Below, in pieces: positions 3-56,848 of a stretch of DNA of 64,000 nucleotides (the first letter of the stretch is position 1; each line of letters opens with the position of its first letter). The notes below the pieces were generated by a model. It searched no databases. It saw only the letters and a list, made by a program, of their open reading frames with translations, and was not told the origin of the DNA. Position numbers and translations under genes: made by a program. The stretch comes from Perna viridis (taxonomy: Eukaryota), in assembly GCA_037379345.1 (NCBI GenBank), contig CM074511.1, forward strand, positions 12,834,001 through 12,898,000, read 5' to 3'.

Positions 3-339
3 TTAAATCAAAGTTCTACACACCGTAATATAATGCAGCTTCTCGCCTTTCAGCGTCGGCCACTACCAATTTTCTACGTCACAGAAAAGGCAGGAAGTAG
101 TGAATTTCTGTCATATTTGTTAGATTGCCGAACAAATAGTGCCCATGCTTTAAACAAACAACAACAACTGAAATATACTTTAGATATTATAAACGCCGTC
201 TCATTTCTCCACGATAAGAAAATTATTCATAGAAATATCACGTGTTCTGCCTTCAGTGTCCGTCTAAATAGTCAAACTTTGTTCCTCCACGATTTTAGCA
301 TTGCAACTCGTGTACTAAGAGAAAATGGAATTATATCAG
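3..339 (+). CDS. Tandem pseudokinase gene, visible exon 1 (5'-partial): kinase-like domain 1, subdomains IV-VII
   Basis: Open frame from base 3: HRNIMQLLAF..PIFYVTE..INAVSFLHDKKIIHRNITCSAFSV..LHDFSIA; donor CAG|GTAGGT at 340, phase 1. Confidence 0.9.
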
Positions 340-655
340 GTAGGTCTATAACTCCATTTGCCAATCTAAAACTAAACTAAATTCTCGTATTGTGAATTTA
401 ACTTTAGGTGGATGCAAACATTTCACTTATCCAATATGAATTCTTTACCCTGAATATTATGCATTCTATAACAAGGATATGTTCAACACGTATTGGATAT
501 TCATTATTCTAATTCCAACTCATAGCACACTCAAATATCGCAACGTATAACAAATTAATGCAGATAGAAGCATGTATTAGTGGATAAGATAATGTTGTAA
601 AATCTACTTAGATAAAATTTAAAGTAGGACCCATTATGACATCGATACACTTCAG

Positions 656-6591: not shown

Positions 6592-7306
6592 TGATCCACT
6601 GACCGACATTGATCATTCACTGTTTACCAGACAGTTAGATACAGAGGTAATGGAAATAACGCGCCAGGAAATAACCCCACAGGCATTACACACAGAGCAT
6701 GTTTCCGATATACCATTAGCAGATTGCAACAAACCGAACGATTCAAATTTTATTTTATCCCAAAATAAATACACACGAAGTGAACAAAACCTTCTAAGCC
6801 ATCAAAGGTTTCCATTTACTCATCATGCATGGCGAATCACTTCACCGCCACATTTACCTAACTTTGTAAATATAAACAGTGCATCGTCTTTATATGCAAA
6901 TAACTCCGATATTAGGTTTAAATCAACGAGTTTTCAGGAAAAAGATAGCATATTGGAAATGCAGTCGTCCAAAGATTTGAAAGGTGACAATGATAACCAA
7001 CATAGACACTGGAATCCGAGCTCTTACACTCAGCTTTATTTACCGGTCGAACAGAAACTACAAAGGCCAAATAACTCCCGACATTGGGTAAGGGATGTAT
7101 CTAAGCTGACTGATGATGCCATTGGTGTCTCCAAAGCACTATCGACTCTCCCTTATAATCAAACATCAATAGAACAAAACAAAAGTTTTGTTTTAGACGA
7201 ACTACAACAACGAATCACTCGAGGAATGCGTGATAGAGAAAGTAGAATGATAAACAAAAGTGGTTATCACATGACAGGTGACAATACTGGTGAAGAATTC
7301 GTATGA
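6592..7306 (+). CDS. Tandem pseudokinase terminal exon: low-complexity/disordered tail ending GEEFV*
   Basis: tactttag| acceptor; phase 2 matches exon 11 and leads in frame into the 218-aa ORF 6650-7306. Confidence 0.85.
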
Positions 7307-25690: not shown

Positions 25691-26959
25691 CTTGAATCAA
25701 AACATGTATTTCAATTCAGACTTTGCTCTGTCCACTTGGCTGTAGAATGTGCTTTCACATGGGAATATAAATACCCAAATACATTCATATATATCTGTTT
25801 GTTGTTTTATTGACAATCACTTTATAAATTGCCTTCTGGTCTAATCACATCAAGACACCTATCATTCAAAAATGCAATGAATTTTTATGAATTTTGTTAT
25901 GAATGTTGTGCAGGTAAAATATTTTGACATTAGTAGTTATCCCAATATATATTTCAGTGCATTTGTGAGTTCCTGTGATTTCCAATATTTTTTTCCGCTC
26001 CTTTCTCAGCCTACCTGTGTATGTTTTATCAATGTGTTCAAAGAGAGTCTAGATGACATAAAACAGGAACTTTACTACTATTTACTCTACCCAGATAATC
26101 ATCCTATAATAAAAATAGATTGAAATTGAATAAATTGACTTCTAATGCAATTTGGGTAAGTTAATGTGATTATTGAAGTCTTGTGAAATGTCTGGAATTT
26201 TTTATATTAGTAGTAGGTATAATAATCCTCATATCAGGCCCTGTTTTGAAATAGTTGCATTCATACCAGTATTTGTTTTAGTAATTTTTAGAACTGATTT
26301 ATAAGTATATGAACTATGCCCACTTTCTGTGAAGTATTCATTAGATAAGTATGAAGTTGTTTTTTAATTGAAAAATTTCCTTATTAATTTGTTGCAGTTA
26401 AGTCATTTTTTGTCTCACCTTAATGATATGCTTGAAAAAATATTTTGGAAGATGATAACTAAAATTTGACAAAAAAGATGGTCAGTCAATGCAGAGATTA
26501 CTCTTTCAGGAGTTTGATTGTGGAAAAGAAGCCCAAGCTATGACTAACTCAGTTTCCTTAGAAAGAGGAATAATCAAGATCTTTGAATTGGTCATGACTA
26601 TTCCATTTGTTACATTGATTGAAGGAAATGATTATTTTTTCCAGAATGTTTTAGGTAATTCCCTAATATGCTGCTTCCAATCATGAATTATTGTTTTCTT
26701 CCATCCCTAATATAACATCTTTTCCAATTAGACAACTCTGAGATTTGCAATAATACAAATTCTTGTTCCTGAAATCCTAAGGCCATTTAATTAAATCTGA
26801 GACTATGAACTCTATTTGACCCTAAAGAGAAGTACTACTAATGTAATTTCTTTAAAGTTGGTTTAGTTACTACCAGTATCCATTCTTCATTTCTTTTTCT
26901 TTATTATTAGTTTATTAAAATAAATCACAGACTCGTTATAATACAGAATTGGCTAGACC

Positions 26960-28590
26960 AGTGAAGATGCAATTATAGTTGTCAGTGTAATTGGTGTTGT
27001 CAGTGTTGTCAGTGTTGTTGATGATGTCTGTTTTTTCAGTGTTGCAGATGTCCATAATGTTTGTGTTGTTGGTGATGTCTGTATTCTCAGTGTTGCAGGT
27101 GTCCATAATGTTTGTGTTGGTGATGTCTGTATTCTCAGTGTTTCCAGTGTGGTTAGTGTAGTTGGTGATGTTTGTGTTGATAGTGTTGTTGTCAGTGATG
27201 TTGGTGATGTCAGTATTCTCAATGTTGCAGGTGAGGTTAGTGCTGTTGTTCTTGTTGTAACTGTTGTCAGTGTGGATGGTGAGATTAGTGGTGTTGTGCT
27301 CATTGTCAGTGTGGATGGTGAGGTTAGTGGTGTTGTGCTCGTTGTCAGTGTGGATGGTGAGGTTAGTGGTGTTGTACTTATTGTCAGGGTGGAATGTGAA
27401 GTTAGTGGTGTTGTACTTGTTGTCATTGTGAATGGTAAGGTTAGTGGTGTTGTGCTTGTTGTCAGTGTGGATGGTGAGGTTAGTGGTGTTGTACTTATTG
27501 TCAGGGTGGAATGTGAGGTTAGTGGTGTTGTACTTGTTGTCATTGTGAATGGTAAGGTTAGTGGTGTTGTGCTTGTTGTCAGGATGGAATGTGAGGTTAG
27601 TGGTGTTGTACTTATTGTCAGTGTGGATGGTTAGGTTAGTGCTGTTGTGCTTGTTGTAACTGTTGTCAGTGTAGATGGTGAGATTAGTGGTGTTGTGCTC
27701 GTTGTCAGTGTGGATGGTGAGGTTAGTGGTGTTGTACTTGTTGTCATTGTGAATGGTAAGGTTAGTGGTGTTGCGCTTGTTGTCAGGGTGGAATGTGAAG
27801 TTAGTGGTGTTGTACTTATTGTCAGTGTGGATGGTTAGGTTAGTGGTGTTGTGCTTGTTGTCAGTGTGGATGATGAGATTAGTGGTGTTGTGCTTGTCAT
27901 CAGTATTGTCAGTGTGGATGGTTAGGTTAGTGGTGTTGTGCTTGTTGTCAGTGTGGATGATGAGATTAGTGGTGTTGTGCTTGTCATCAGTATTGTCAGT
28001 GTGGATGGTTAGGTTAGTGGTGTTGTGCTCATTGTCAGTGTGGAATGTGAGGTTAGTGGTGTTGTGCTTATTGTCTGTGTTGTTGAGGAGGTTAGTGGTG
28101 TTGTGCTTATTGTCTGTGTTGTTGAGGAGGCTAGTGGTGTTGTGCTTATTGTCTGTGTTGTTGAGGAGGCTAGTGGTGTTGTGCTTGTTGTCAGTGTGGA
28201 TGATGAGATTAGTGGTGTTGTGCTTGTCATCAGTATTGTCAGTGTGGATGGTGAGGTTAGTGGTGTTGTGCTTATTGTCTGTGTTGTTGAGGAGGCTAGT
28301 GGTGTTGTGCTTATTGTCTGTGTTGTTGAGGAGGCTAGTGGTGTTGTGCTTATTGTCTGTGTTGTTGAGGAGGTTAGTGGTGTTGTGCTTATTGTCTGTG
28401 TTGTTGAGGAGGCTAGTGGTGTTGTGCTTATTGTCTGTGTTGTTGAGGAGGCTAGTGGTGTTGTGCTTATTGTCTGTGTTGTTGAGGAGGCTAGTGTTGT
28501 AGGTTATGCGTGCTGTCAAAGATGTTTTTACTGTTAGTGTTATTGGGGTTGCTGTTATTGGTGTTGTGCTTGTTGCTAGTGTTGTTTTTG
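26960..28590. repeat. 1.6-kb GT-rich minisatellite with 33/42-bp units in the main body; one minus frame stays open for 555 aa
   Basis: Units such as gttagtggtgttgtgcttgttgtcagtgtggatggtgag; see finding on coding potential. Confidence 0.95.
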
Positions 28591-29169
28591 TTTGTGATTT
28601 CATGTTATTTATTTTGTTGTTTTTCTTAAAATTGAAAAAAGATATTGGCCATAGAAGATTATAAAAGTTTCATCTTATTTCTACTTTATTACAATGGATA
28701 ACAATGAATGAATTATAAAGATGTGTTCTCTTTCTTTTTTCCAAATTATCAGGAATATTAAGGAGTTGTTGTTTTTTTATAGTGCAATTGCTATTTTTCT
28801 TCCTTTCTTTCTTTTATTTTTTTCAGTTATTGACATACCTCATGAGCAATTAAAGACAGCTATTTACATAAGAGTAACGAAATTACTGTAAACATAAAAT
28901 AAATTTTCATTAAGTGATTTTAAACCCTTTTTTTTATGGATTTATATTACTGCTATTTGTGCATCTACCCACATATCATATTTGATGGATTTTAATAATT
29001 ACTTGTTACAATTGTTGTCTGTATAGAAAAAAAAGCTTCATTTGTTTTCCTTTGTTCTAAAAGTTTTCATTCCAGTGTTATGGAATGTTTGTAAAAAAGG
29101 GGGAATGGTGGGTGCATTATGTGCATTAGTGTTTTTTTACCCCTGCTTTTAAAGTGGTAGTATGTAATG

Positions 29170-38460: not shown

Positions 38461-41400
38461 TTCTATCCACAAATCTTCAAAAAACCCTGAATGGAATTTA
38501 ATGAAACTTTCAAAAGTTCTTAATTCCATGATGTTATAATGTATCTACTATTATATTTTTCCATTAATGACTTTTTAGGTTTCTTATATAGTTTCTTATG
38601 AGGAGAGTGTGGGGTATCACCTTGTTTTTATCACTATTTTTTCTAGTTTATATTTCAACACATATCACTCCCTATTAGTTAATGGATTTCTAAAGAGAAT
38701 CTTTACAATCCTAATGGGTAGTCTTTCAATCTAATCACTCCTGGTTTAAAATTTTCTTTGTTTACTGAAATTAGATTTTGCAAATTAGAGTAAGTAATAA
38801 TCAACATCTAAATTTGAAAGGAAAAAGCTATATTAATTTTGAGGAACTTCAAAACAGACTTCATTCTGATTATTTTCAAGAAAATACTAATTACAGTAGA
38901 AATCTCTTTTATCTTTACTAACCTTCAGAACTTCAATAAAATAATGAATTATAGACAGGGTTTAGGAACAGAGTCAGAATGAGAAATTAACAAATTTTAC
39001 TTGGAACAACAAAACATATCATAATATACAGGATACATGGACTACTCAGATGTCTTGATTCCATGGTTGGATTACACATGTTTCATTACCTGTATACATT
39101 ATTTCCCTTAGAAAAATCTCAGGTGTTGGAAAAACTCATTTGTGGAGAATGCCATCAAAGCAATTTTTCCTATATCAAATCCCTTCTTGGGTTTGATTTT
39201 TTCTGGTGTAAAATTATGTATACAAGTCATATCCAGTTTTTGTAGACTGACAGGTTTCCATGGTGATGTTTTTTTTTCCAATTTTCTTTTTAATGTTGTT
39301 GATAACAAAGATCATTCTGTCTGTCTAGAATAACAAACTCATTATATTTGTGTCACATCCTGTTGCTTTTCTAAATAAGATATGATTTTATTCATGATGA
39401 GAATTTATTGGTGTTTTTGTACTAGAGTGCTATGAGGTATAACTTGATACTAGTATGTATGATTATTGTGTATCTAATTTTGATTGGTTTAGCTAGTTGA
39501 ACTAGGCATACACAGGAAAAACTTGCAACTTATGTTTTCATATGTTTCAAAACATACAGAAACATATGTTTAGGCATGGTATAGAAATATATTTATTTTT
39601 GCCCTTAAAACTTGTGAACTGAATATTTTATCCCAATTAAAACATGACTTTAATGGCTGAAATCATCTTGGAAACATTTGTTATCCTATTGATATTTTAA
39701 AAAAGTATCAGATATTTATATTTTATTGGAAACATTTGCTTTTCATATGTTTTTTATGGTGGTCCTAAACATTCCTGTGTATTTTGAAACAAAATTTGAT
39801 GACTGTTGTAATTTCTGTAATTTGAAGTTCACATACTATAACTACTTATAACAAAATAAATCCAAGGTCGACCAAATGGGGCAAAGTATGGGATGCTTAT
39901 AGCATGTATCTATGTTCCCTACATATACTATCAGCTGGATACTAGCCCTTCAACTCAGGGAAACAATGATCCATCATCATGAAATTTCTTAAAGAATAAA
40001 TGTATAGTAACAATGTATATTGAAAAACTGTTTCATAACACAGGAAGTAGAGAGCTGATCCAGTCAAAAAGTGTATGTATGGTACAATTTACCACAAGAG
40101 AGCTACATACCAAACATTGACTGATTCCTCTTCTAGAAACCCAAGATAAGAGCAATCAAATTAGCTTGCTGTACATTCTTATGAGGAATTGTTAATGTCC
40201 TTGATGCCTATAATGCAAGAGCTTAATAATTCAAGCTATTACTATTATTCTGCATCAGAATAACACGTTTACTAAGGACTACTGTTGTGGAGACCCCTTT
40301 TCAGTTCTGTTAGATTAATATGTCTTGTTAAACCCCTCTGGCCTCTGTGTCCAGACTTGTAAACACAAATGATAAGTTCAGAGGTTGAATCAGTTAAGTC
40401 AAATCCATGAAAAAAAATGACACAATAGCTTAAATTACTCTTTTAAAATACCAGTTCCATTGTACATAATATCATGACCAATAAATAGGGAAAAATTGTT
40501 TTAACCTTGGAAATCTCAGAAGGTTTGATGTATGGTATATATTCACCATATTAGAACAAATCAGGAATTATCATGTAGTTACAAATATTCTCAATTATGA
40601 TGTCATTGATCACAGACATCTAGTAGATAAATTTGAGTTAATAATTTTATTTGAGAGACTTGTTACAAGCCACTTAGGTGATCTGGCACTAATTACATCT
40701 CCTCGCTGCTTGAAATATATCATGACACAAATTATATTTTGTTGAAATAAAAAGTACTGGTATTTTGTCTTGTCCAATGTTTGTTTCTACTTTCTGCCTG
40801 TTGCAGAATAATCTTTCTACTCATACATTATATGCTTGGTCTACATTGCTGATTGGTTGTTTTAAGTACTGATGCAAAATTGAAAATTCAATATATGTCT
40901 ATACAGATTTATGTTTATAAGGCTACAAAAGAACATGCACTAGTGAAGAAAATACAGATTGTCAATGACAATGATTTCATGGTGTTATGAATAATTTGGC
41001 TTTTGTGACATCATGCAAGGAGAGTTGCCTAGGGGTATAAACAAATTATTTGAAGAATAAAAGAAGCAGAATCATACTCTAGGACCACATGATTATCATA
41101 TTTCTAAAAATTTAACATTGAAATTTCTCAGTATAGTCATCATATTCCAAAAATTCTGATTGTTTATAATTTGCAGAGTATGATTCTAAATATGAATACA
41201 TGCCATAATCATTGATTTTAAAGTTTTTGCCAGGCATATAACTTTATCTTCAATTTCCTGTGAAATGATTCAAAAGTTTGTTGGCTAATAGTTGTAGTCT
41301 ACTATATGTTGAGGAAACTGAGCTTGTCAATACACCAGATGTAACCTGGCCCACTATCTAGAATAACTAAAATCTCACATAACTGACTTCTTATTAGTAA

Positions 41401-41529
41401 GTGAAAGTAGTTGATATTCACTTTGTCCTCTAAATTTATTAGATTGGTGTCTTATTTAGAAATAAAATATTGTGGTTTATGGGAAGATTTATGCCAAAAA
41501 GTTAATGTTACATGTAATTCCACAGAAAT

Positions 41530-41690
41530 CAGGCCCCGGCACCACAAAAGTTTAAAAAAAAAAACTTAAGTCTGAGAATATTCTTAATTTTCATGGTAAC
41601 TCCAATCAAAGTTTTTGAAATTATTGATGTCACAGTTAAGAATTTTCTCAGACTTAAGTAATTTTTTAATTTCTGTGGTGCTGGAGCCTG
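41530..41690. mobile_element. Fold-back MITE (Harbinger/Tourist-like ends)
   Basis: CAGGCCCCGGCACCACA..ACTTAAGTCTGAGAA / TTCTCAGACTTAAGT..TGTGGTGCTGGAGCCTG. Confidence 0.75.
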
Positions 41691-42066
41691 ATGACTTGAC
41701 ATGTACTCAACTGGGTATTGGTTAGTTGGGTTAGAAAGCAATTTAGTTGGGCTTATTTTGTTTGCGTTTTCATTGAATTCAAAAGCGAAATGTGTGAAAT
41801 GGAAGCACTTAAGTAATTGTCTGTCCTATTGTATGTAAAACAGCAATTATAACATGAATTATTTATTGAATGGTCATGAAGGGAACAGTTACTTAGCAAT
41901 GGGATTAAAAGAAGACAAAGTTATAAACCTGAAAGTAAAAAAATGTTTTTTTGTACTAGTATTTAAATTAATTTTTACAAGAAAGTTCTCTCTCATATAA
42001 ATTACAATATGCAAAAATAACCTGCCTTATACATGTGACATTCTAGAAGGATATTGGTATATTATA

Positions 42067-42981
42067 TTAGATCTTAGTATTAATGTTTGTCAATTCATCC
42101 TTTGAAAAAAAGGAAATGTCACCTGATTCACTGAACCTTGCAAAGTACTTTTTTGATCTGCCAGGAATCTTTAGAAACTGTTTTCCAACCTTTTTCTTCT
42201 TCTTTGGTGTGTTGGGTACAGGTTTATGATAGTCTTTTAATCCATTTGTCTGAAGTGCAAGTTGAGTTGAAGCATTTACCAGAATCTGCTCTGATAAATG
42301 TGTTATATATTCCGCAGATAGTTTTGAAAGATTTGGTGTAAGTGTCAGGTCTTTGAATTTTGTATCAGCCACCTTATTGTTTTTCCAACGATTTTCTACA
42401 GCACTTTTGTTTATACATGGTGAACTCTCTACAAATATTTCATCTTGCATTTTATCTTCTTTGTGAATTGTGGCAGTTGTGGTAGCAGACGAATACTTGC
42501 TGCCAATTTCGGCGGTAAACCATTCACATTCATCATCTGTAGATAGATCACCACCATTAATTTGATTTATGTCAAGGTCACTCCAAACTTGTTTCCTATG
42601 TCCAGACTTTTTCTTAATCAGTAACGGCTCACTTTTGCACTTTGATGAATATGAGTCTAAACTGTCTATGTCATTTTCAAAACTTTCCTCCAGGATTTCA
42701 TCCCTACTTGAGCACACAGAAGCAGACAAACAGCTATCCTCATCATTTTTCTCAATTTGAAGAGTTGAGCCATCTGTTGAAAGACGTACAGTTATCATCT
42801 CCTGGCGATGCCCATAATTATATGTTTTAGTTGTTGTAGAAAATATATTGAACTCTGCCTCTTCCTTTTGAAATCCTTTGTTTAGTAATGAGATATCAGA
42901 GAATTTATTCTTATTCTTGTAAAATTTCCCTGGAAAAATTCTAAATTTTGATGAAGAATGTCTTCCAGGTCTACATCCCAT
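42067..42981 (-). CDS. Intronless nested gene, 304 aa from the MGC start; putative lipid-anchored AKAP-like scaffold
   Basis: Long non-repetitive ORF in very AT-rich DNA; second ATG has strong context (ATCATGG); MGC N-terminus; helix AEYITHLSEQILVNASTQL; minus-strand AATAAA at 41867-41862. Confidence refers to it being a gene; the function is inferred. Confidence 0.8.
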   Translation of the reverse strand: MGCRPGRHSSSKFRIFPGKFYKNKNKFSDISLLNKGFQKEEAEFNIFSTTTKTYNYGHRQEMITVRLSTDGSTLQIEKNDEDSCLSASVCSSRDEILEESFENDIDSLDSYSSKCKSEPLLIKKKSGHRKQVWSDLDINQINGGDLSTDDECEWFTAEIGSKYSSATTTATIHKEDKMQDEIFVESSPCINKSAVENRWKNNKVADTKFKDLTLTPNLSKLSAEYITHLSEQILVNASTQLALQTNGLKDYHKPVPNTPKKKKKVGKQFLKIPGRSKKYFARFSESGDISFFSKDELTNINTKI

Positions 42982-45675
42982 GATTATCATTAAATTTCAC
43001 TTTTAAAATTAATTGTTGCTGATGTCAAATGTATAAAATCACCTCTTCATTCTTTGCTGTTGCAATATAATAAACATTGCATTCCACTGACTTCTGCATC
43101 AAAATGTAGATTAATACTCCGTGAAATAAACATTAGAGCATTTAACATAACTCATAATGTGATCAAAGTTATTAACTGATGGCTTGGTGTATAATCCATG
43201 TTTCCTATGTTCCGAAGATGCTATTTTACCAATCTAGATAGATACGATGCTATTGATTTGTGATTGGTCGAACCTAAGATGGTCATTAAGTATTGTTTCG
43301 GTATAACTCCTATTATAACTATTGCCTGATAACATTTACAACCATTTGTTATCAAATTGTAAAACTGATCATTAGCATGCCAATTTCTGTTCGCTAGCTT
43401 TGTCTACTTGAGGTTGACAAAAACATTGATTGAATTTATGTCCCCCATGATTTCTCAGCTGATAGAAATATTGGACTTTTACGGAATAAAAACGTCAGTG
43501 TGAGAACAATATTGAAACTTTATAGCATCTCAGCAGTATTTTTTTTCTTCTAAAAATTTACAGAACCATGATAGACATTTTGTTTGCATTCGTCTTGTGT
43601 AGGACATCATTGTTTACTCTTTGCAAATACCAACATTGTTTGAAATATTGGTATGAAGTCTTGTTAATCCAATGTTAAAAAGTTAATGATTATATTGCTC
43701 GCTTGCAAATTGCACAACACACACAACCAACATGAATGATTTGAATTCTCCAATATTCTCTCAGTAGATTTGTATTGAAAACTATTATTATACCAGTGAC
43801 ATTAAGCTGTAGACTATATCGCTCTTTGTAATGTATATTGATTGGGTTTTATCATTTTCTGCTAATTACTCCGTAATTTAAAATGAAATGTCACCAATAA
43901 AGCCATTGAATCCTCTGGTAAAAGTTTTTCTCAAATAGTTAGCATGATATTTGATTATCTGTCTTGTCCGATGATCTTTGATTTTTAATGTTGATAGTTT
44001 AATGGTAGCTGTAGTACTCATTTCTTTCATTCCATGTCAACAATACATTACAGTAACATTTAAAATATTCTGAGGTATAGTTTATAGCATGTAGTGCTGA
44101 TTTTGGGTGCTTTGTTTTACAGTTATGGGTTTTAGCTTTGACTTTTTAATACCTCAGAATTATTAGGACATAAAATCAGTGCTTTGTGTAACAATTGCTA
44201 AATCTATGGTTTATTTTCAAACAGTTAAAACTGTTAGTGTGTTGTCAGCATGTTTTAATTTGGTGTGGTTCAGCAGTATTTTTGAATATTCAAACCACTT
44301 TTTTTTGGTTGAAGCTAAAAACTATTTGTGAGGATGAGGTTGTAGAATGTGTCATCACAGTTTGCCTAATTGTACGAAGTCATCCTATACATTAAGCCCA
44401 TTATGAGCCAAGCATGACATTAATGTTGCCTTTAAATGATATGTTTTATACTTATATTAATCTCTGAGAATTCAACTTGTTAAGTTTCCTATTTTTGAAA
44501 GCCACAACATTAGAAACATTAATGGTATGTCTCTGAATAATAATTTCTCTGCAATCTGTTACTTATTAATTTTAGCATTTTCAATATTTTTTCTGTTAAG
44601 TTTGGTACAAGTAAGTTGGCATTTGTTTTGTCAATTCCATGATAGCTAGACATTTTCATCACCAATTACTTTCATTTGATATTGTGTTAAATTATTACAG
44701 TGCATATGACATTTCCTCTTTCTATACAGTTCTTTGTTACAAGTATTGATTAAATGTAGTCACCTTTCTCTGGAAGAAAAAACAATAAATAGAACCAAAA
44801 TGTCATCAATGAAAAAATACAGAATACCATCAATTAGAATCGGCAGAATATTAAGTCTGTTTTTTTCCACTTATGACAGCCACACTGTTGAAGAACTATG
44901 GAAATGAAATGTGGATAATGAAAAATTTGAGAATCAAATGAGAACATTTACATTTAGGTTGGACTGTTACGTGACTAAATAATGGAAATAATGTCAATTG
45001 GTTGACATTAATACTGTCAATTCCTTACTGTGTTATTCACTTTGTAGTGTTGGTTTTTCCTAAGGTGTAAGGAAGGAACATGGAGACATGGTAGTTGTGG
45101 AATTGAATCATTGAAAGCAGTGTACAATCTTAAAACATGGTTAAATTCAATAAATTATGTTATCCTTGGAGTGTGAAAAATGTGAAAATAAGCCAGTTTC
45201 TTATATTTTTAATTTATTCTGAATGAAAATTGTGTTGATCATACAAAGTGTGACAACCAAAAATTTCATAAAAAATAAAAAGTTTTAACAGTATATTCAT
45301 TCCAATCATTAATCAAAGCCCTCTGGTGTTTCTGGTTGGATGGTCTATAGATTTTTTTGTTGTTGAAAACTTTCAAACTAAAGAGCTTATTTTACCCCTA
45401 AAAGTCTATTTTTGGTTTGATTTTGCTAAAGAGAAGATTGACAAATGTTAAATTAAAAAAAACAAAAAACTCTACTCCAAAATTACAAGAGAAGTTGTGT
45501 TCAAAATCAGAATTGATTTGGATTTTTTTATTTTTATAGTGCAAAATTAAAAAAAAAAATTTCCAATCTTTTCTATAGTTACCATCTGGAAGCTACCTTA
45601 GAATGGACAGACTAATAGATGTACACTCATTCGTTAATAGAAATTGAACACATCACATAAATCCTTCCTACTGCA

Positions 45676-53169: not shown

Positions 53170-54085
53170 TGTGTGGTGGACATGTTTTTCAACAAATGGT
53201 CAGCATTCCAGTGGGTACAAATTGTGCTCCTTTACTTGCTGACCTATTCCTTCACTCTTATGAGGCTGTTTTTATAGCTGATCTGATACGAAAGAAAGAA
53301 TAGCATTTGGCTAAATCCTTTAATCTCAGTTTCCGCCATATAGATGATGTATTATCTTTAAACAATCCTTATTTCGTGAATTTGATACATCGCATCTACC
53401 CCAAAGAACTTGAGATGAAGGATACTACACACTGTGAATTCAGCCTCATATCTTAACCTACACTTAGAAATCGATGGTAAAGAAAAACTATTGACCAAAC
53501 TTTACGACAAACGTGATGACTTTTTATTCAGAATTGTCAACTTTCCTTTCATCTGTGGCAGCATCTCTTCAGCACCTGCATATGGAGTGTTCATATCACA
53601 ACTCATATGTTATGCCAGAGCTTGCAGATACTACACAGACTTTTTGTATCACTCTAGAACTCTAGCAAATAGGCTTCTGGAACAGGGTTATGTTGCTACA
53701 AGATTGAAGCCATCTCTACAGAAGTTTTATGGTGGTCATCATGAACTTTTGGATAGTTATGGTGTATCCATCTGCACCATGAAAATTGATTTATTCAACA
53801 GGTCATAGTTTTCCTTTCTTTGTTTGTCTTCCTCGGACTTGACTTTTTATGAGCAACTCAGCAGGTGTTTCTAGAAAAGCATAGGACGCTTACCCTACCA
53901 GTGCACCTGGTCCATGCTCCCAGTTTTTAGTGGAGTCCGAGTTGCTCATTTGCTTTTGTTACTTTGTATGTATGATTTTAGTCACTTTATGTTCTTTGTT
54001 GTGTATGTTTCCATGTCTGGTCTTTGTCCCTGGATTACATTCTTTTGATTACAGCTATAACCTTGGTTCCCTTGATTACTCTTTT
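53170..54085 (+). mobile_element. 5'-truncated, disabled Penelope-like retroelement (RT palm/thumb and 3' UTR; no C-terminal GIY-YIG)
   Basis: VFQQMVSIPVGTNCAPLLADLFLHSYE..*..FRHIDDVLSLNN..IYPKELEMKDT/frameshift/SASYLNLHLEID..TKLYDKRDDF.FRIVNFPF..AYGVFISQL. Confidence 0.9.
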
Positions 54086-56292: not shown

Positions 56293-56785
56293 ATGGAAAA
56301 TGATAGAACAGAAGACCATCGGAATGAAATTAATGATACAAAACTAAAGGGAACAGTTGAAGGTGCAATTGTTGAAAATGGAATAGACAGTACCAAAGAG
56401 GGAATTAAGAATGGTGAAGCTGATTATACCCCACCGGATTCTGAAGATGAAACTTATTCCACCGATTCTGATGTTAGCCAAACAGGAAAGTCCAAAGAAA
56501 AGGAAAATAATGTAGCTAAAGACCAAACAGACAATAATACTGATGGAAAATGTAATGGTCAAGATAGAAGTTCTGTTCCTGAAAGCGAGTTGGCAAGACC
56601 TACTAGCAGCAATAATTCAACAAAACCATCAAATGGTGAAGACACTGAAGCTGGAGATAGACCTTCAAGTGTAGCTTCTGGTCAAAGTGGTGATGGTAAA
56701 CGACCTAAATCGTCAGATAGCCAAACTTCATACTCCAGTATTTCATCTGATAACAGTCAACATTCTAAAGAGCAAGAAATTGATG
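56293..56785 (+). CDS. First coding exon (exon 56187-56785) of an unidentified + strand gene; acidic/Ser-rich disordered N-terminus
   Basis: Acceptor cttttcattattgcag| at 56186, ATG in ATCATGG context, 164 open codons with RPxS repeats, donor G|GTATGA at 56786; no further exon identified in the window. Confidence 0.8.
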
Positions 56786-56848
56786 GTATGATTTCACTGT
56801 AACAAAAAATGTCATCTCATTACAGTAGTGAAATTGTCACCCCTTTTG

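What the first reader, a model, noticed from the sequence alone, without database searches (positions are those of the whole stretch)
42067..42981. Nested antisense intronless gene resembling a membrane-anchored, RI-type AKAP (smAKAP-like)
Seen: a 304-aa mostly disordered protein starting MGCRPGR followed by a basic/aromatic patch. It has an amphipathic helix AEYITHLSEQILVNASTQL (42259-42315) and a polybasic PKKKKKVGK, and lies opposite the inferred host gene in a CpG-retaining patch. Known (recalled): vertebrate smAKAP/C2orf88 starts MGC (myristoyl plus palmitoyl) and binds PKA-RI via LEYAHRLSQDILCDALQQW, sharing E-Y-x3-L-S-x2-I-L-x2-A-x2-Q with this helix. Inference: an undescribed invertebrate PKA anchor that whole-protein BLAST would miss. 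Caveat: Gly at position 6 is suboptimal for myristoylation.
Basis: partly seen in the sequence, partly recalled or inferred. Interest (0 to 1): 0.8.

Follow-up and report, generated by a model that had tools for sequence, protein, structure and literature searches.

The report
Lipid-anchored mussel protein with AKAP-like helix
This is a real, expressed, intronless mussel gene for a probably membrane-anchored, mostly disordered protein of a mollusc-only family, and its mussel-specific helix looks like the docking helix that anchoring proteins use to hold protein kinase A, but it is not a relative of vertebrate smAKAP and binding is unproven.

Summary
The ORF is real. It is 304 aa from MGC at 42067-42981 on the minus strand, and 307 aa from an in-frame upstream ATG. 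It is single copy, under strong purifying selection (dN/dS about 0.1), and covered by a roughly 2.4 kb unspliced, single-strand transcript. Mytilid mussels carry orthologues at 58-72% identity.

A profile search finds a wider family, so far only in molluscs (bivalves and gastropods). That family shares the exact N-terminus MGCRPS[RK], a three-stranded beta module (..ITVRLSTDGSxLEIE) and an R-[SC]-x-S-A-P motif. It does not share the helix.

The helix is invariant on its hydrophobic face in four mytilids. It fits the published AKAP register (positions 2, 5, 6, 9, 10, 13, 14, 17). It is also the protein's best match to the smAKAP, AKAP-IS and RIAD peptides, all in one register.

A complex prediction with the mussel's own PKA RI docking dimer scored 0.39 against 0.02 for the best control, which the tool grades as weak support.

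Against smAKAP kinship:
- the Pfam SmAKAP model finds nothing;
- the protein is three times larger than smAKAP;
- the RI-determining Tyr-Ala is Tyr-Ile here;
- the helix is a mytilid novelty.

Verdict: a candidate membrane AKAP that is analogous to smAKAP, not homologous. PKA docking is about 40% likely. Nesting inside a host gene is unverified.

The parts
40900..43300 (-). Transcribed region: one unspliced RNA of about 2.4 kb, with a 5' UTR of about 0.3 kb and a 3' UTR of about 1.15 kb. The ends are approximate, taken from 200-base depth bins.
   Evidence: Raw RNA-seq reads of run X17 cover only 40.9-43.3 kb of the 6 kb laid. All have the first mate on the + strand and none on the - strand, and there are no joints. 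The minus strand is inferred from the usual dUTP convention. The poly(A)-signal variants TATAAA and CATAAA lie at about 40908-40919 on the minus strand.
42067..42981 (-). Coding sequence, 304 aa plus stop, in a single exon
   Evidence: It is single copy in the 723 Mb genome. The orthologous CDS is one exon in M. coruscus (L002) and in L003. dN/dS is 0.10-0.13 with synonymous sites saturated.
42982..42990 (-). In-frame upstream ATG (MII-) in a weak context, probably bypassed
   Evidence: The first ATG has T at -3. The MGC ATG has A at -3 and G at +4. The MGC ATG also has a purine at -3 in L002 and L012. RefSeq gastropod models of the family start at MGCRPS.
42961..42981 (-). N-terminal MGCRPGR, a putative N-myristoylation (Gly2) and palmitoylation (Cys3) signal
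   Evidence: M1, G2, C3 and R4 are nearly invariant in 19 family members from bivalves and gastropods. Position 6 is Ser outside mytilids and Gly in mytilids. Lipidation is inferred from the motif and was not tested.
42901..42960 (-). Basic and aromatic patch after the lipidation motif (residues 8-27)
   Evidence: It is conserved in the four mytilid sequences. A membrane-association role is an inference.
42742..42849 (-). Family-defining beta module (residues 45-80: F.xFSTTxKxY ... ITVRLSTDGSxLQIEK)
   Evidence: It holds the invariant columns F47, Y54, I63, T64, R66, L67, S68, D70, G71, L74 and E77 across 19 sequences. The model shows three strands with pLDDT 71-88. There is no significant fold match: Foldseek E > 0.3 and VIA Z <= 3.5.
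42619..42645 (-). Conserved motif SKCKSEPLL. In the wider family it reads R-[SC]-x-S-A-P-x-L, which resembles a basophilic kinase site and a 14-3-3 mode-1 site.
   Evidence: S117 and P119 are invariant in 19 sequences. The 14-3-3 or kinase reading rests on my own knowledge of the RSxpSxP motif and was not tested.
42508..42543 (-). Acidic and aromatic motif S-x-DDEC-x-W-x-TA, specific to mytilids
   Evidence: Invariant in the four mytilid sequences. Function unknown.
42247..42315 (-). Amphipathic, acidic helix (residues 223-245), the candidate D/D-docking (AKAP-type) helix. Tyr225 is position 1.
   Evidence: Predicted as a helix in both models. Face positions 2, 5, 6, 9, 10, 13 and 14 are invariant, position 17 is L or F, and the other variable positions (11, 12, 15, 16, 18) are off the face. 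dN/dS is 0.04-0.07. It is the best match in the protein to three AKAP peptides in one register. ipSAE with the RI D/D dimer is 0.39 against 0.02 for the best control.
42181..42207 (-). Polybasic run PKKKKKVGK
   Evidence: Present in three of four orthologues and absent in P0004.
42103..42147 (-). C-terminal hairpin ARFSESGDISFFS
   Evidence: Invariant core A281-F291 in the four mytilids. The model shows two strands with pLDDT about 77.

Best explanation
The locus is an independent, intronless, minus-strand gene. It encodes a 304-aa, mostly disordered protein of a family found so far only in molluscs and not described before.

The family's ancestral features are:
- an exact N-terminus MGCRPS/G-R, which most likely receives myristate on Gly2 and palmitate on Cys3 and so fixes the protein to the inner face of a membrane;
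- a small three-stranded beta module;
- a serine motif that looks phosphorylatable.

In mytilid mussels the protein has also acquired a conserved, acidic amphipathic helix whose hydrophobic face has the spacing of an A-kinase-anchoring helix. The most likely mechanism is that this helix lies in the groove of the docking/dimerisation domain of a PKA regulatory subunit. RI is favoured by the aromatic residue at position 1, though dual RI/RII binding is possible. PKA would then be held at the membrane.

That makes the protein a functional analogue of vertebrate smAKAP or AKAP18-alpha that arose by convergence, not an orthologue.

Shown here: the gene, its transcript, its constraint, the family, the conservation pattern and the fit of the helix register. 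Inferred: lipidation, membrane location and PKA binding.
For: Gene and constraint:
- The ORF is not a chance product.
- It is single copy.
- The transcript is unspliced and single-strand.
- dN/dS is 0.10-0.13 overall, 0.02-0.12 in the N-terminus and 0.04-0.07 in the helix segment, with dS saturated.

Family:
- Mytilid orthologues are 58-72% identical, including M. coruscus CAC5389149 and M. edulis CAG2240511.
- Distant members occur in Haliotis, Gigantopelta and Mactra.
- MGCR is nearly invariant at the exact N-terminus.

Helix:
- It is predicted as a helix in both models.
- Positions 2, 5, 6, 9, 10, 13, 14 and 17 read I, L, S, I, L, A, S, L. This matches the hydrophobic face published in PMC12083921.
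- Ser6 and Ala13 are shared with smAKAP.
- Ungapped scores against smAKAP, AKAP-IS and RIAD all peak at this segment in one register. They are reached by 33, 91 and 237 of 20000 shuffles respectively.
- The generic face pattern occurs once in each mytilid protein and never in about 9900 residues of 17 distant homologues.

Partner:
- The genome encodes a typical RI D/D domain (L007) and RII-type D/D domains.
- Complex prediction with two copies of the RI D/D domain and residues 205-255 gave ipSAE 0.39 against 0.02 for the best control. Partner pLDDT was 54 and the runs agreed in at least 77% of contacts. The tool's verdict is 'weak support'.
Against: - No binding data exist.
- The tool states that a pass at 0.60 or under is more often wrong than right unless the guess was likely beforehand. 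Its controls were unrelated proteins, not other amphipathic helices.
- Position 2 is Ile, not the nearly invariant Ala of RI-selective AKAPs. Position 14 is Ser, not a branched hydrophobic residue.
- No Pfam AKAP model hits the protein, even at E <= 10.
- The helix is absent from non-mytilid family members, so PKA anchoring cannot be the family's ancestral role.
- The shuffle tests do not model the periodicity of natural amphipathic helices, and the three peptides are not independent of one another.
- Lipidation is inferred from a motif, and an in-frame upstream ATG exists.
Confidence: 0.4

Rival explanations
1. The protein is a lipid-anchored disordered scaffold of the mollusc family, and the mytilid helix binds some partner unrelated to PKA. 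It could also fold back on the protein's own beta elements. Its fit to the AKAP register would then be the generic look of an acidic amphipathic helix.
For: The family's conserved core is the N-terminus, the beta module and the Ser-x-Pro motif, not the helix. No AKAP family model matches. The complex score is only a weak pass. Ile at position 2 and Ser at position 14 are atypical.
Against: All eight face positions are compatible with an AKAP helix, with small residues at positions 6 and 13. The helix is the protein's top match to three AKAP peptides in the same register. The pattern is absent from about 9900 residues of similar composition. The RI dimer scored 0.37 above every control.
Confidence: 0.35
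2. The helix docks a non-PKA protein that carries an RIIa-type four-helix docking domain, such as a ropporin-, SP17- or CABYR-like 'R2D2' protein. These also bind AKAP-type helices.
For: The genome has at least five loci with RIIa domains. Two of them (L008, L010) are not PKA R subunits by their flanking sequence. A helix of AKAP type cannot by itself tell these partners apart. That R2D2 proteins bind such helices is my own knowledge.
Against: These domains were not tested here. The aromatic residue at position 1 is the published determinant for RI specifically.
Confidence: 0.12
3. The gene is a true, highly diverged orthologue of vertebrate smAKAP (C2orf88). This would move the origin of smAKAP to before the split of protostomes and deuterostomes.
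For: Both proteins start with MGC and share E-Y-x3-L-S-x2-I-L-x2-A-x2-Q in the helix, 9 of 24 identities.
Against: PF15127 finds nothing in the protein or the genome. The protein is 304 aa, against a 97-position SmAKAP model. The helix is missing from gastropod and heterodont bivalve relatives, so it arose within the family. It resembles the designed RII peptide AKAP-IS equally well. A published survey places the origin of smAKAP at the base of the vertebrates (PMC12083921).
Confidence: 0.03
4. The ORF is not a functional protein-coding gene. It would be a chance ORF, a pseudogene or a transposon remnant.
For: No known domain was found. Read depth is low.
Against: About 4e-6 such ORFs are expected by chance per window. 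dN/dS is about 0.1 across species with saturated dS. The gene is single copy, and the transcript is confined to the gene.
Confidence: 0.01

Closest known systems
smAKAP / C2orf88 (Pfam PF15127), the vertebrate small membrane AKAP selective for PKA RI
   Same: Both have an N-terminal MGC, a putative myristoyl plus palmitoyl anchor. Both have an acidic amphipathic helix with Tyr at position 1, Leu5, Ser6, Ile9, Leu10, Ala13 and a large hydrophobic residue at position 17. The peptide from PMC12535202 shares 9 of 24 residues.
   Different: There is no detectable homology: PF15127 gives no hit. The protein is 304 aa, about three times the 97 positions of the SmAKAP model. It has Ile instead of the RI-determining Ala at position 2. 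It has no Arg at -2 of Ser6, whereas the smAKAP peptide has one; that Ser6 is smAKAP's PKA phosphosite is my own recollection. It carries a beta module and other motifs that smAKAP lacks. The helix arose within a mollusc family.
AKAP-IS and RIAD, designed consensus AKAP peptides (PMC2652104)
   Same: They align in the same register. AKAP-IS shares I2, L5, Q8, I9, N12, A13 and Q16, 7 of 17 residues. The Tyr of RIAD aligns with Tyr225.
   Different: These are synthetic peptides, so the match shows likeness to the generic AKAP consensus and not kinship. Ser at position 14 replaces their Ile.
AKAP18-alpha (AKAP7 short form) and other lipid-anchored AKAPs
   Same: By my own knowledge, they share the architecture of an N-terminal lipid anchor followed by one docking helix in an otherwise small or disordered protein.
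   Different: No sequence relation was found: no Pfam AKAP7 models match. AKAP18-alpha is RII-preferring.
Uncharacterised mollusc proteins (Haliotis asinina XP_067683276, Gigantopelta aegis XP_041350231, Mactra antiquata KAL4226685, Mytilus coruscus CAC5389149, M. edulis CAG2240511)
   Same: These are true relatives. They share the MGCRPS/G N-terminus, the beta module and the S-x-P motif, at E from 1e-4 to 1e-7 for distant members and 58-72% identity for mytilids.
   Different: Non-mytilid members are 400-850 aa, share no detectable similarity beyond the first 130 or so residues, and lack the helix. None has a described function.

Membership tests
smAKAP (C2orf88, PF15127) | Sequence match to the family profile | tested here: not met
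   hmmscan at E <= 10 gave no family. PF15127 searched against the whole genome in six frames gave no match at E <= 10. That search had no positive control ring.
smAKAP (C2orf88, PF15127) | N-terminal Met-Gly-Cys dual acylation signal | tested here: met
   The motif MGCRPGR is present at a strong-context ATG and conserved across the family. This covers the sequence motif only; the lipids themselves cannot be tested with these tools.
smAKAP (C2orf88, PF15127) | Small protein of about 100 residues with a single helix | tested here: not met
   The protein is 304 aa and has an additional conserved beta module and C-terminal hairpin.
RI-selective AKAP helix (PMC12083921) | Aromatic residue (F or Y) at helix position 1 | tested here: met
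   Tyr225 is invariant in four orthologues.
RI-selective AKAP helix (PMC12083921) | Nearly invariant Ala at position 2 | tested here: not met
   Ile226 is present in all four orthologues.
AKAP (functional class) | Amphipathic helix of 14-18 residues with hydrophobic or small residues at positions 2, 5, 6, 9, 10, 13, 14 and 17 | tested here: met
   These positions read I, L, S, I, L, A, S and L/F. Ser14 is the weakest fit. The segment is predicted helical.
AKAP (functional class) | Direct binding of the helix to the D/D domain of a PKA R subunit | tested here: inconclusive
   This was prediction only. ipSAE was 0.39 against 0.02 for the best control, which the tool grades as 'weak support'. It needs a bench assay.
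Mollusc MGCRPS family (undescribed) | Exact N-terminus MGCRP, the FSTTxKxY..ITVRLSTDGSxL[EQ]IE module and the S-x-P motif | tested here: met
   The profile search and the 19-sequence alignment show it.

The most novel reading that the evidence does not exclude
Mytilid mussels evolved a PKA RI (or dual RI/RII) docking helix de novo inside a mollusc-specific, lipid-anchored disordered protein. The result would be a membrane AKAP convergent with vertebrate smAKAP. It would be the first membrane-tethered AKAP with RI-type determinants outside vertebrates, which counters the published view that such anchors arose at the base of the vertebrates.
Probability: 0.25. Interest if true: 0.6.

Novelty: new member of a known kind. 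Interest (0 to 1): 0.4.

Why it matters
AKAPs are defined by function and have arisen many times. A recent survey (PMC12083921) dates RI-selective and membrane-tethered small AKAPs to the vertebrates.

A mussel protein that combines a dual-lipid anchor with an AKAP-register helix bearing the aromatic position-1 determinant would be a clean case of convergent invention of membrane PKA anchoring. It would also give a handle on compartmentalised cAMP signalling in bivalves. By my own knowledge, cAMP and PKA control catch muscle, cilia and sperm motility in these animals.

Whatever the helix does, the work defines a mollusc-wide protein family that has no description yet. Its N-terminus and beta module have been conserved since bivalves and gastropods diverged.

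Tried and rejected
- Pfam and NCBIfam scans of the whole protein, the helix segment and the orthologues found nothing, apart from one noise hit.
- PDB sequence searches with the whole protein and with the helix segment found nothing at E <= 10.
- The SmAKAP model searched against the genome found nothing.
- The ESM Atlas gave a best score of 0.81 for the whole protein, which is below a usable level. The helix segment gave no usable hit.
- Fold searches with the better model gave Foldseek E > 0.3 and VIA Z <= 3.5, so there is no informative match.
- P0034, an apparent six-fold match to the helix region, is a leucine-rich-repeat protein and was discarded as spurious.
- A helix-only HMM against 17 distant family members gave nothing above reversed-sequence decoys. 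An eye-caught resemblance in the Mactra protein (EYVTNFTEN) is therefore not significant.
- The Eisenberg hydrophobic moment did not single out the helix. Lys/Arg-rich, proline-containing segments dominate the measure, so it was dropped as uninformative.
- A synteny check against M. coruscus and a second mytilid contig found no shared flanking exons, so the 'host gene' could not be assessed.
- The bacterial promoter scan is irrelevant to this animal genome.
- A literature search for mussel AKAPs found no prior description.
- The complex prediction is reported only as a weak pass.

Full report
**Observation**

The minus strand carries an open frame at 42067..42990. It is 307 aa from a first ATG and 304 aa from the second ATG at 42981, which opens MGCRPGR.
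- The first ATG has T at -3. The second has A at -3 and G at +4.
- In two orthologous loci the MGC ATG also has a purine at -3.
- At the window's base composition, about 4e-6 open frames of this length are expected by chance.
- The window holds no N.

**Is it a gene?**

The protein is single copy in the 723 Mb genome.

I laid raw reads of one RNA-seq run on 39501-45500.
- Coverage is confined to about 40.9-43.3 kb. Every pair has its first mate on the + strand and none on the - strand. There are no joints.
- This indicates one unspliced RNA of about 2.4 kb from a single strand.
- Under the usual dUTP convention that strand is the minus strand.
- The other convention would put the RNA on the plus strand. 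There the longest frame overlapping the gene (41-44 kb listed) is 67 aa.
- Contigs of three further runs, whose RNA label is only a guess, hold parts of the stretch.

Poly(A)-signal variants lie just upstream of where depth falls.

CpG observed/expected is 0.55-0.66 at the 5' end against 0.04-0.14 in the flanks. The counts are small.

**Relatives**

A word-based protein search found three clusters at 58-72% identity over the full length. Their named members are unnamed proteins of Mytilus coruscus and M. edulis. The coding sequence is one exon in the M. coruscus assembly and in a second long contig.

dN/dS values:

| Segment | dN/dS |
|---|---|
| Whole CDS | 0.10-0.13 |
| N-terminal 82 residues | 0.02-0.12 |
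| Helix segment | 0.04-0.07 |

Synonymous sites are saturated in these comparisons.

A profile of the four sequences, scored against 1.84 billion representatives, found 18 proteins at E <= 0.001.
- The named ones are uncharacterised proteins of Haliotis, Gigantopelta and Mactra.
- One hit, P0034, is a leucine-rich-repeat protein and is spurious.

The 19-sequence alignment shows what the family shares:
- the exact N-terminus MGCRPS[RK] (Gly replaces Ser6 in mytilids);
- F.xFSTTxKxY followed by ITVRLSTDGSxL[EQ]IE;
- an R-[SC]-x-S-A-P-x-L motif, which reads K-C-K-S-E-P-L-L in mytilids.

Beyond about residue 130 the long (400-850 aa) non-mytilid proteins are not alignable with the mytilid ones.

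**Structure**

With four sequences the AlphaFold2 model is poor, at mean pLDDT 41. With 19 sequences three elements stand out:
- three strands at residues 47-80 (pLDDT 71-88);
- a helix at 223-245 (about 68);
- a hairpin at 280-292 (about 77).

The rest scores low, which fits disorder. Fold searches gave nothing informative. No Pfam, NCBIfam or PDB sequence match exists.

**The helix**

AKAP-IS and RIAD are printed in PMC2652104.

PMC12083921 supplies the criteria:
- the hydrophobic face occupies positions 2, 5, 6, 9, 10, 13, 14 and 17;
- F or Y at position 1 with a nearly invariant Ala at position 2 determines RI anchoring;
- smAKAP originates at the base of the vertebrates.

With Tyr225 as position 1, the face here reads I, L, S, I, L, A, S, L.
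- Positions 2-14 of the face are invariant in four orthologues.
- Position 17 is L or F.
- The other variable positions (11, 12, 15, 16, 18) lie off the face.

Ungapped BLOSUM62 scores of the whole protein against the three peptides all peak at this segment and in the same register:

| Peptide | Score | Identities | Shuffles reaching the score (of 20000) |
|---|---|---|---|
| smAKAP | 35 | 9 of 24 | 33 |
| AKAP-IS | 30 | 7 of 17 | 91 |
| RIAD | 29 | 5 of 18 | 237 |

These tests ignore helix periodicity, and the peptides are related to one another. They show likeness to the AKAP consensus, not to smAKAP in particular.

A generic face pattern occurs once in each mytilid protein and not at all in about 9900 residues of 17 distant family members. 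A helix-only HMM finds nothing in those members above reversed decoys. So the helix is a mytilid feature, not an ancestral one.

**Partner test**

The genome has five RIIa-domain loci.
- One (L007) encodes a typical RI N-terminus with the full docking domain.
- Two (L006, L009) are RII-like. L009 is an intronless full-length RII-like frame.

- ipSAE was 0.39, 0.39 and 0.38 in three runs, against 0.02, 0.02 and 0.01 in three controls.
- Partner pLDDT was 54, and the runs agreed in at least 77% of contacts.
- The tool's verdict is 'weak support'. It warns that a pass at 0.60 or under is more often wrong than right unless the guess was likely beforehand. It also warns that a pass may reflect memory of solved look-alike complexes.
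- The controls were unrelated proteins, not other amphipathic helices.

**Reading**

- High confidence: a real, expressed gene of a mollusc-restricted family with a deeply conserved, probably lipidated N-terminus.
- Moderate confidence (about 0.4): the mytilid helix docks a PKA R-subunit dimer, which would make the protein a membrane AKAP.
- Low (about 0.03): homology with smAKAP. The SmAKAP profile does not match. The size and extra modules differ. Position 2 is Ile. The helix arose within the family.
- The 14-3-3 or kinase reading of the S-x-P motif and the lipidation both rest on motif knowledge and were not tested.

**Context**

The claim that the gene is nested antisense in a host intron could not be verified.
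- No plus-strand reads cross the 6 kb laid.
- The M. coruscus annotation shows a stand-alone gene with a divergent neighbour.
- No flanking exon is shared.

**Novelty**

No paper in the library links mussels to such an anchor. If binding holds, this is a new, convergent member of the AKAP class.

Noticed in passing
window 27264-28500 (array), ORF 26936-28603 (-): A 39-bp minisatellite with about 31 copies at 83% match. It produces long repeat-driven open frames on both strands, including a 555-aa Thr/Asn-rich frame on the minus strand, and a strong GC skew at 27-29 kb.
   Followed up: partly
window 33-380 (+): An exon-like frame that matches the middle of a protein kinase domain (PF07714, E 9e-7).
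   Followed up: partly
window 41557-41667: A short stretch in the 3' UTR has much higher contig depth and many loose ends in several runs. It behaves like a dispersed repeat embedded in the UTR.
   Followed up: no
window 53434-53808 (+) and L003:16850-17260: A 124-aa frame is about 50% identical to a frame 6 kb from the orthologue in another mytilid contig. It has no Pfam match. It may be a shared repeat or transposon fragment rather than conserved synteny.
   Followed up: no
L009 (G000:C3:35439599-35442706), minus strand: A full-length PKA RII-like regulatory subunit lies in one open frame of 399 codons without introns. It has a D/D domain, an RRQS inhibitor site and two cyclic-nucleotide-binding domains, and it exists beside a separate RII-type first exon at L006. 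It may be a retrogene copy.
   Followed up: no
window 56293-56802 (+) and 6650-7306 (+): Two long plus-strand frames are acidic, Ser-rich and low in complexity, with no Pfam match. They may be exons of neighbouring genes and bear on whether the gene at 42 kb is nested.
   Followed up: no
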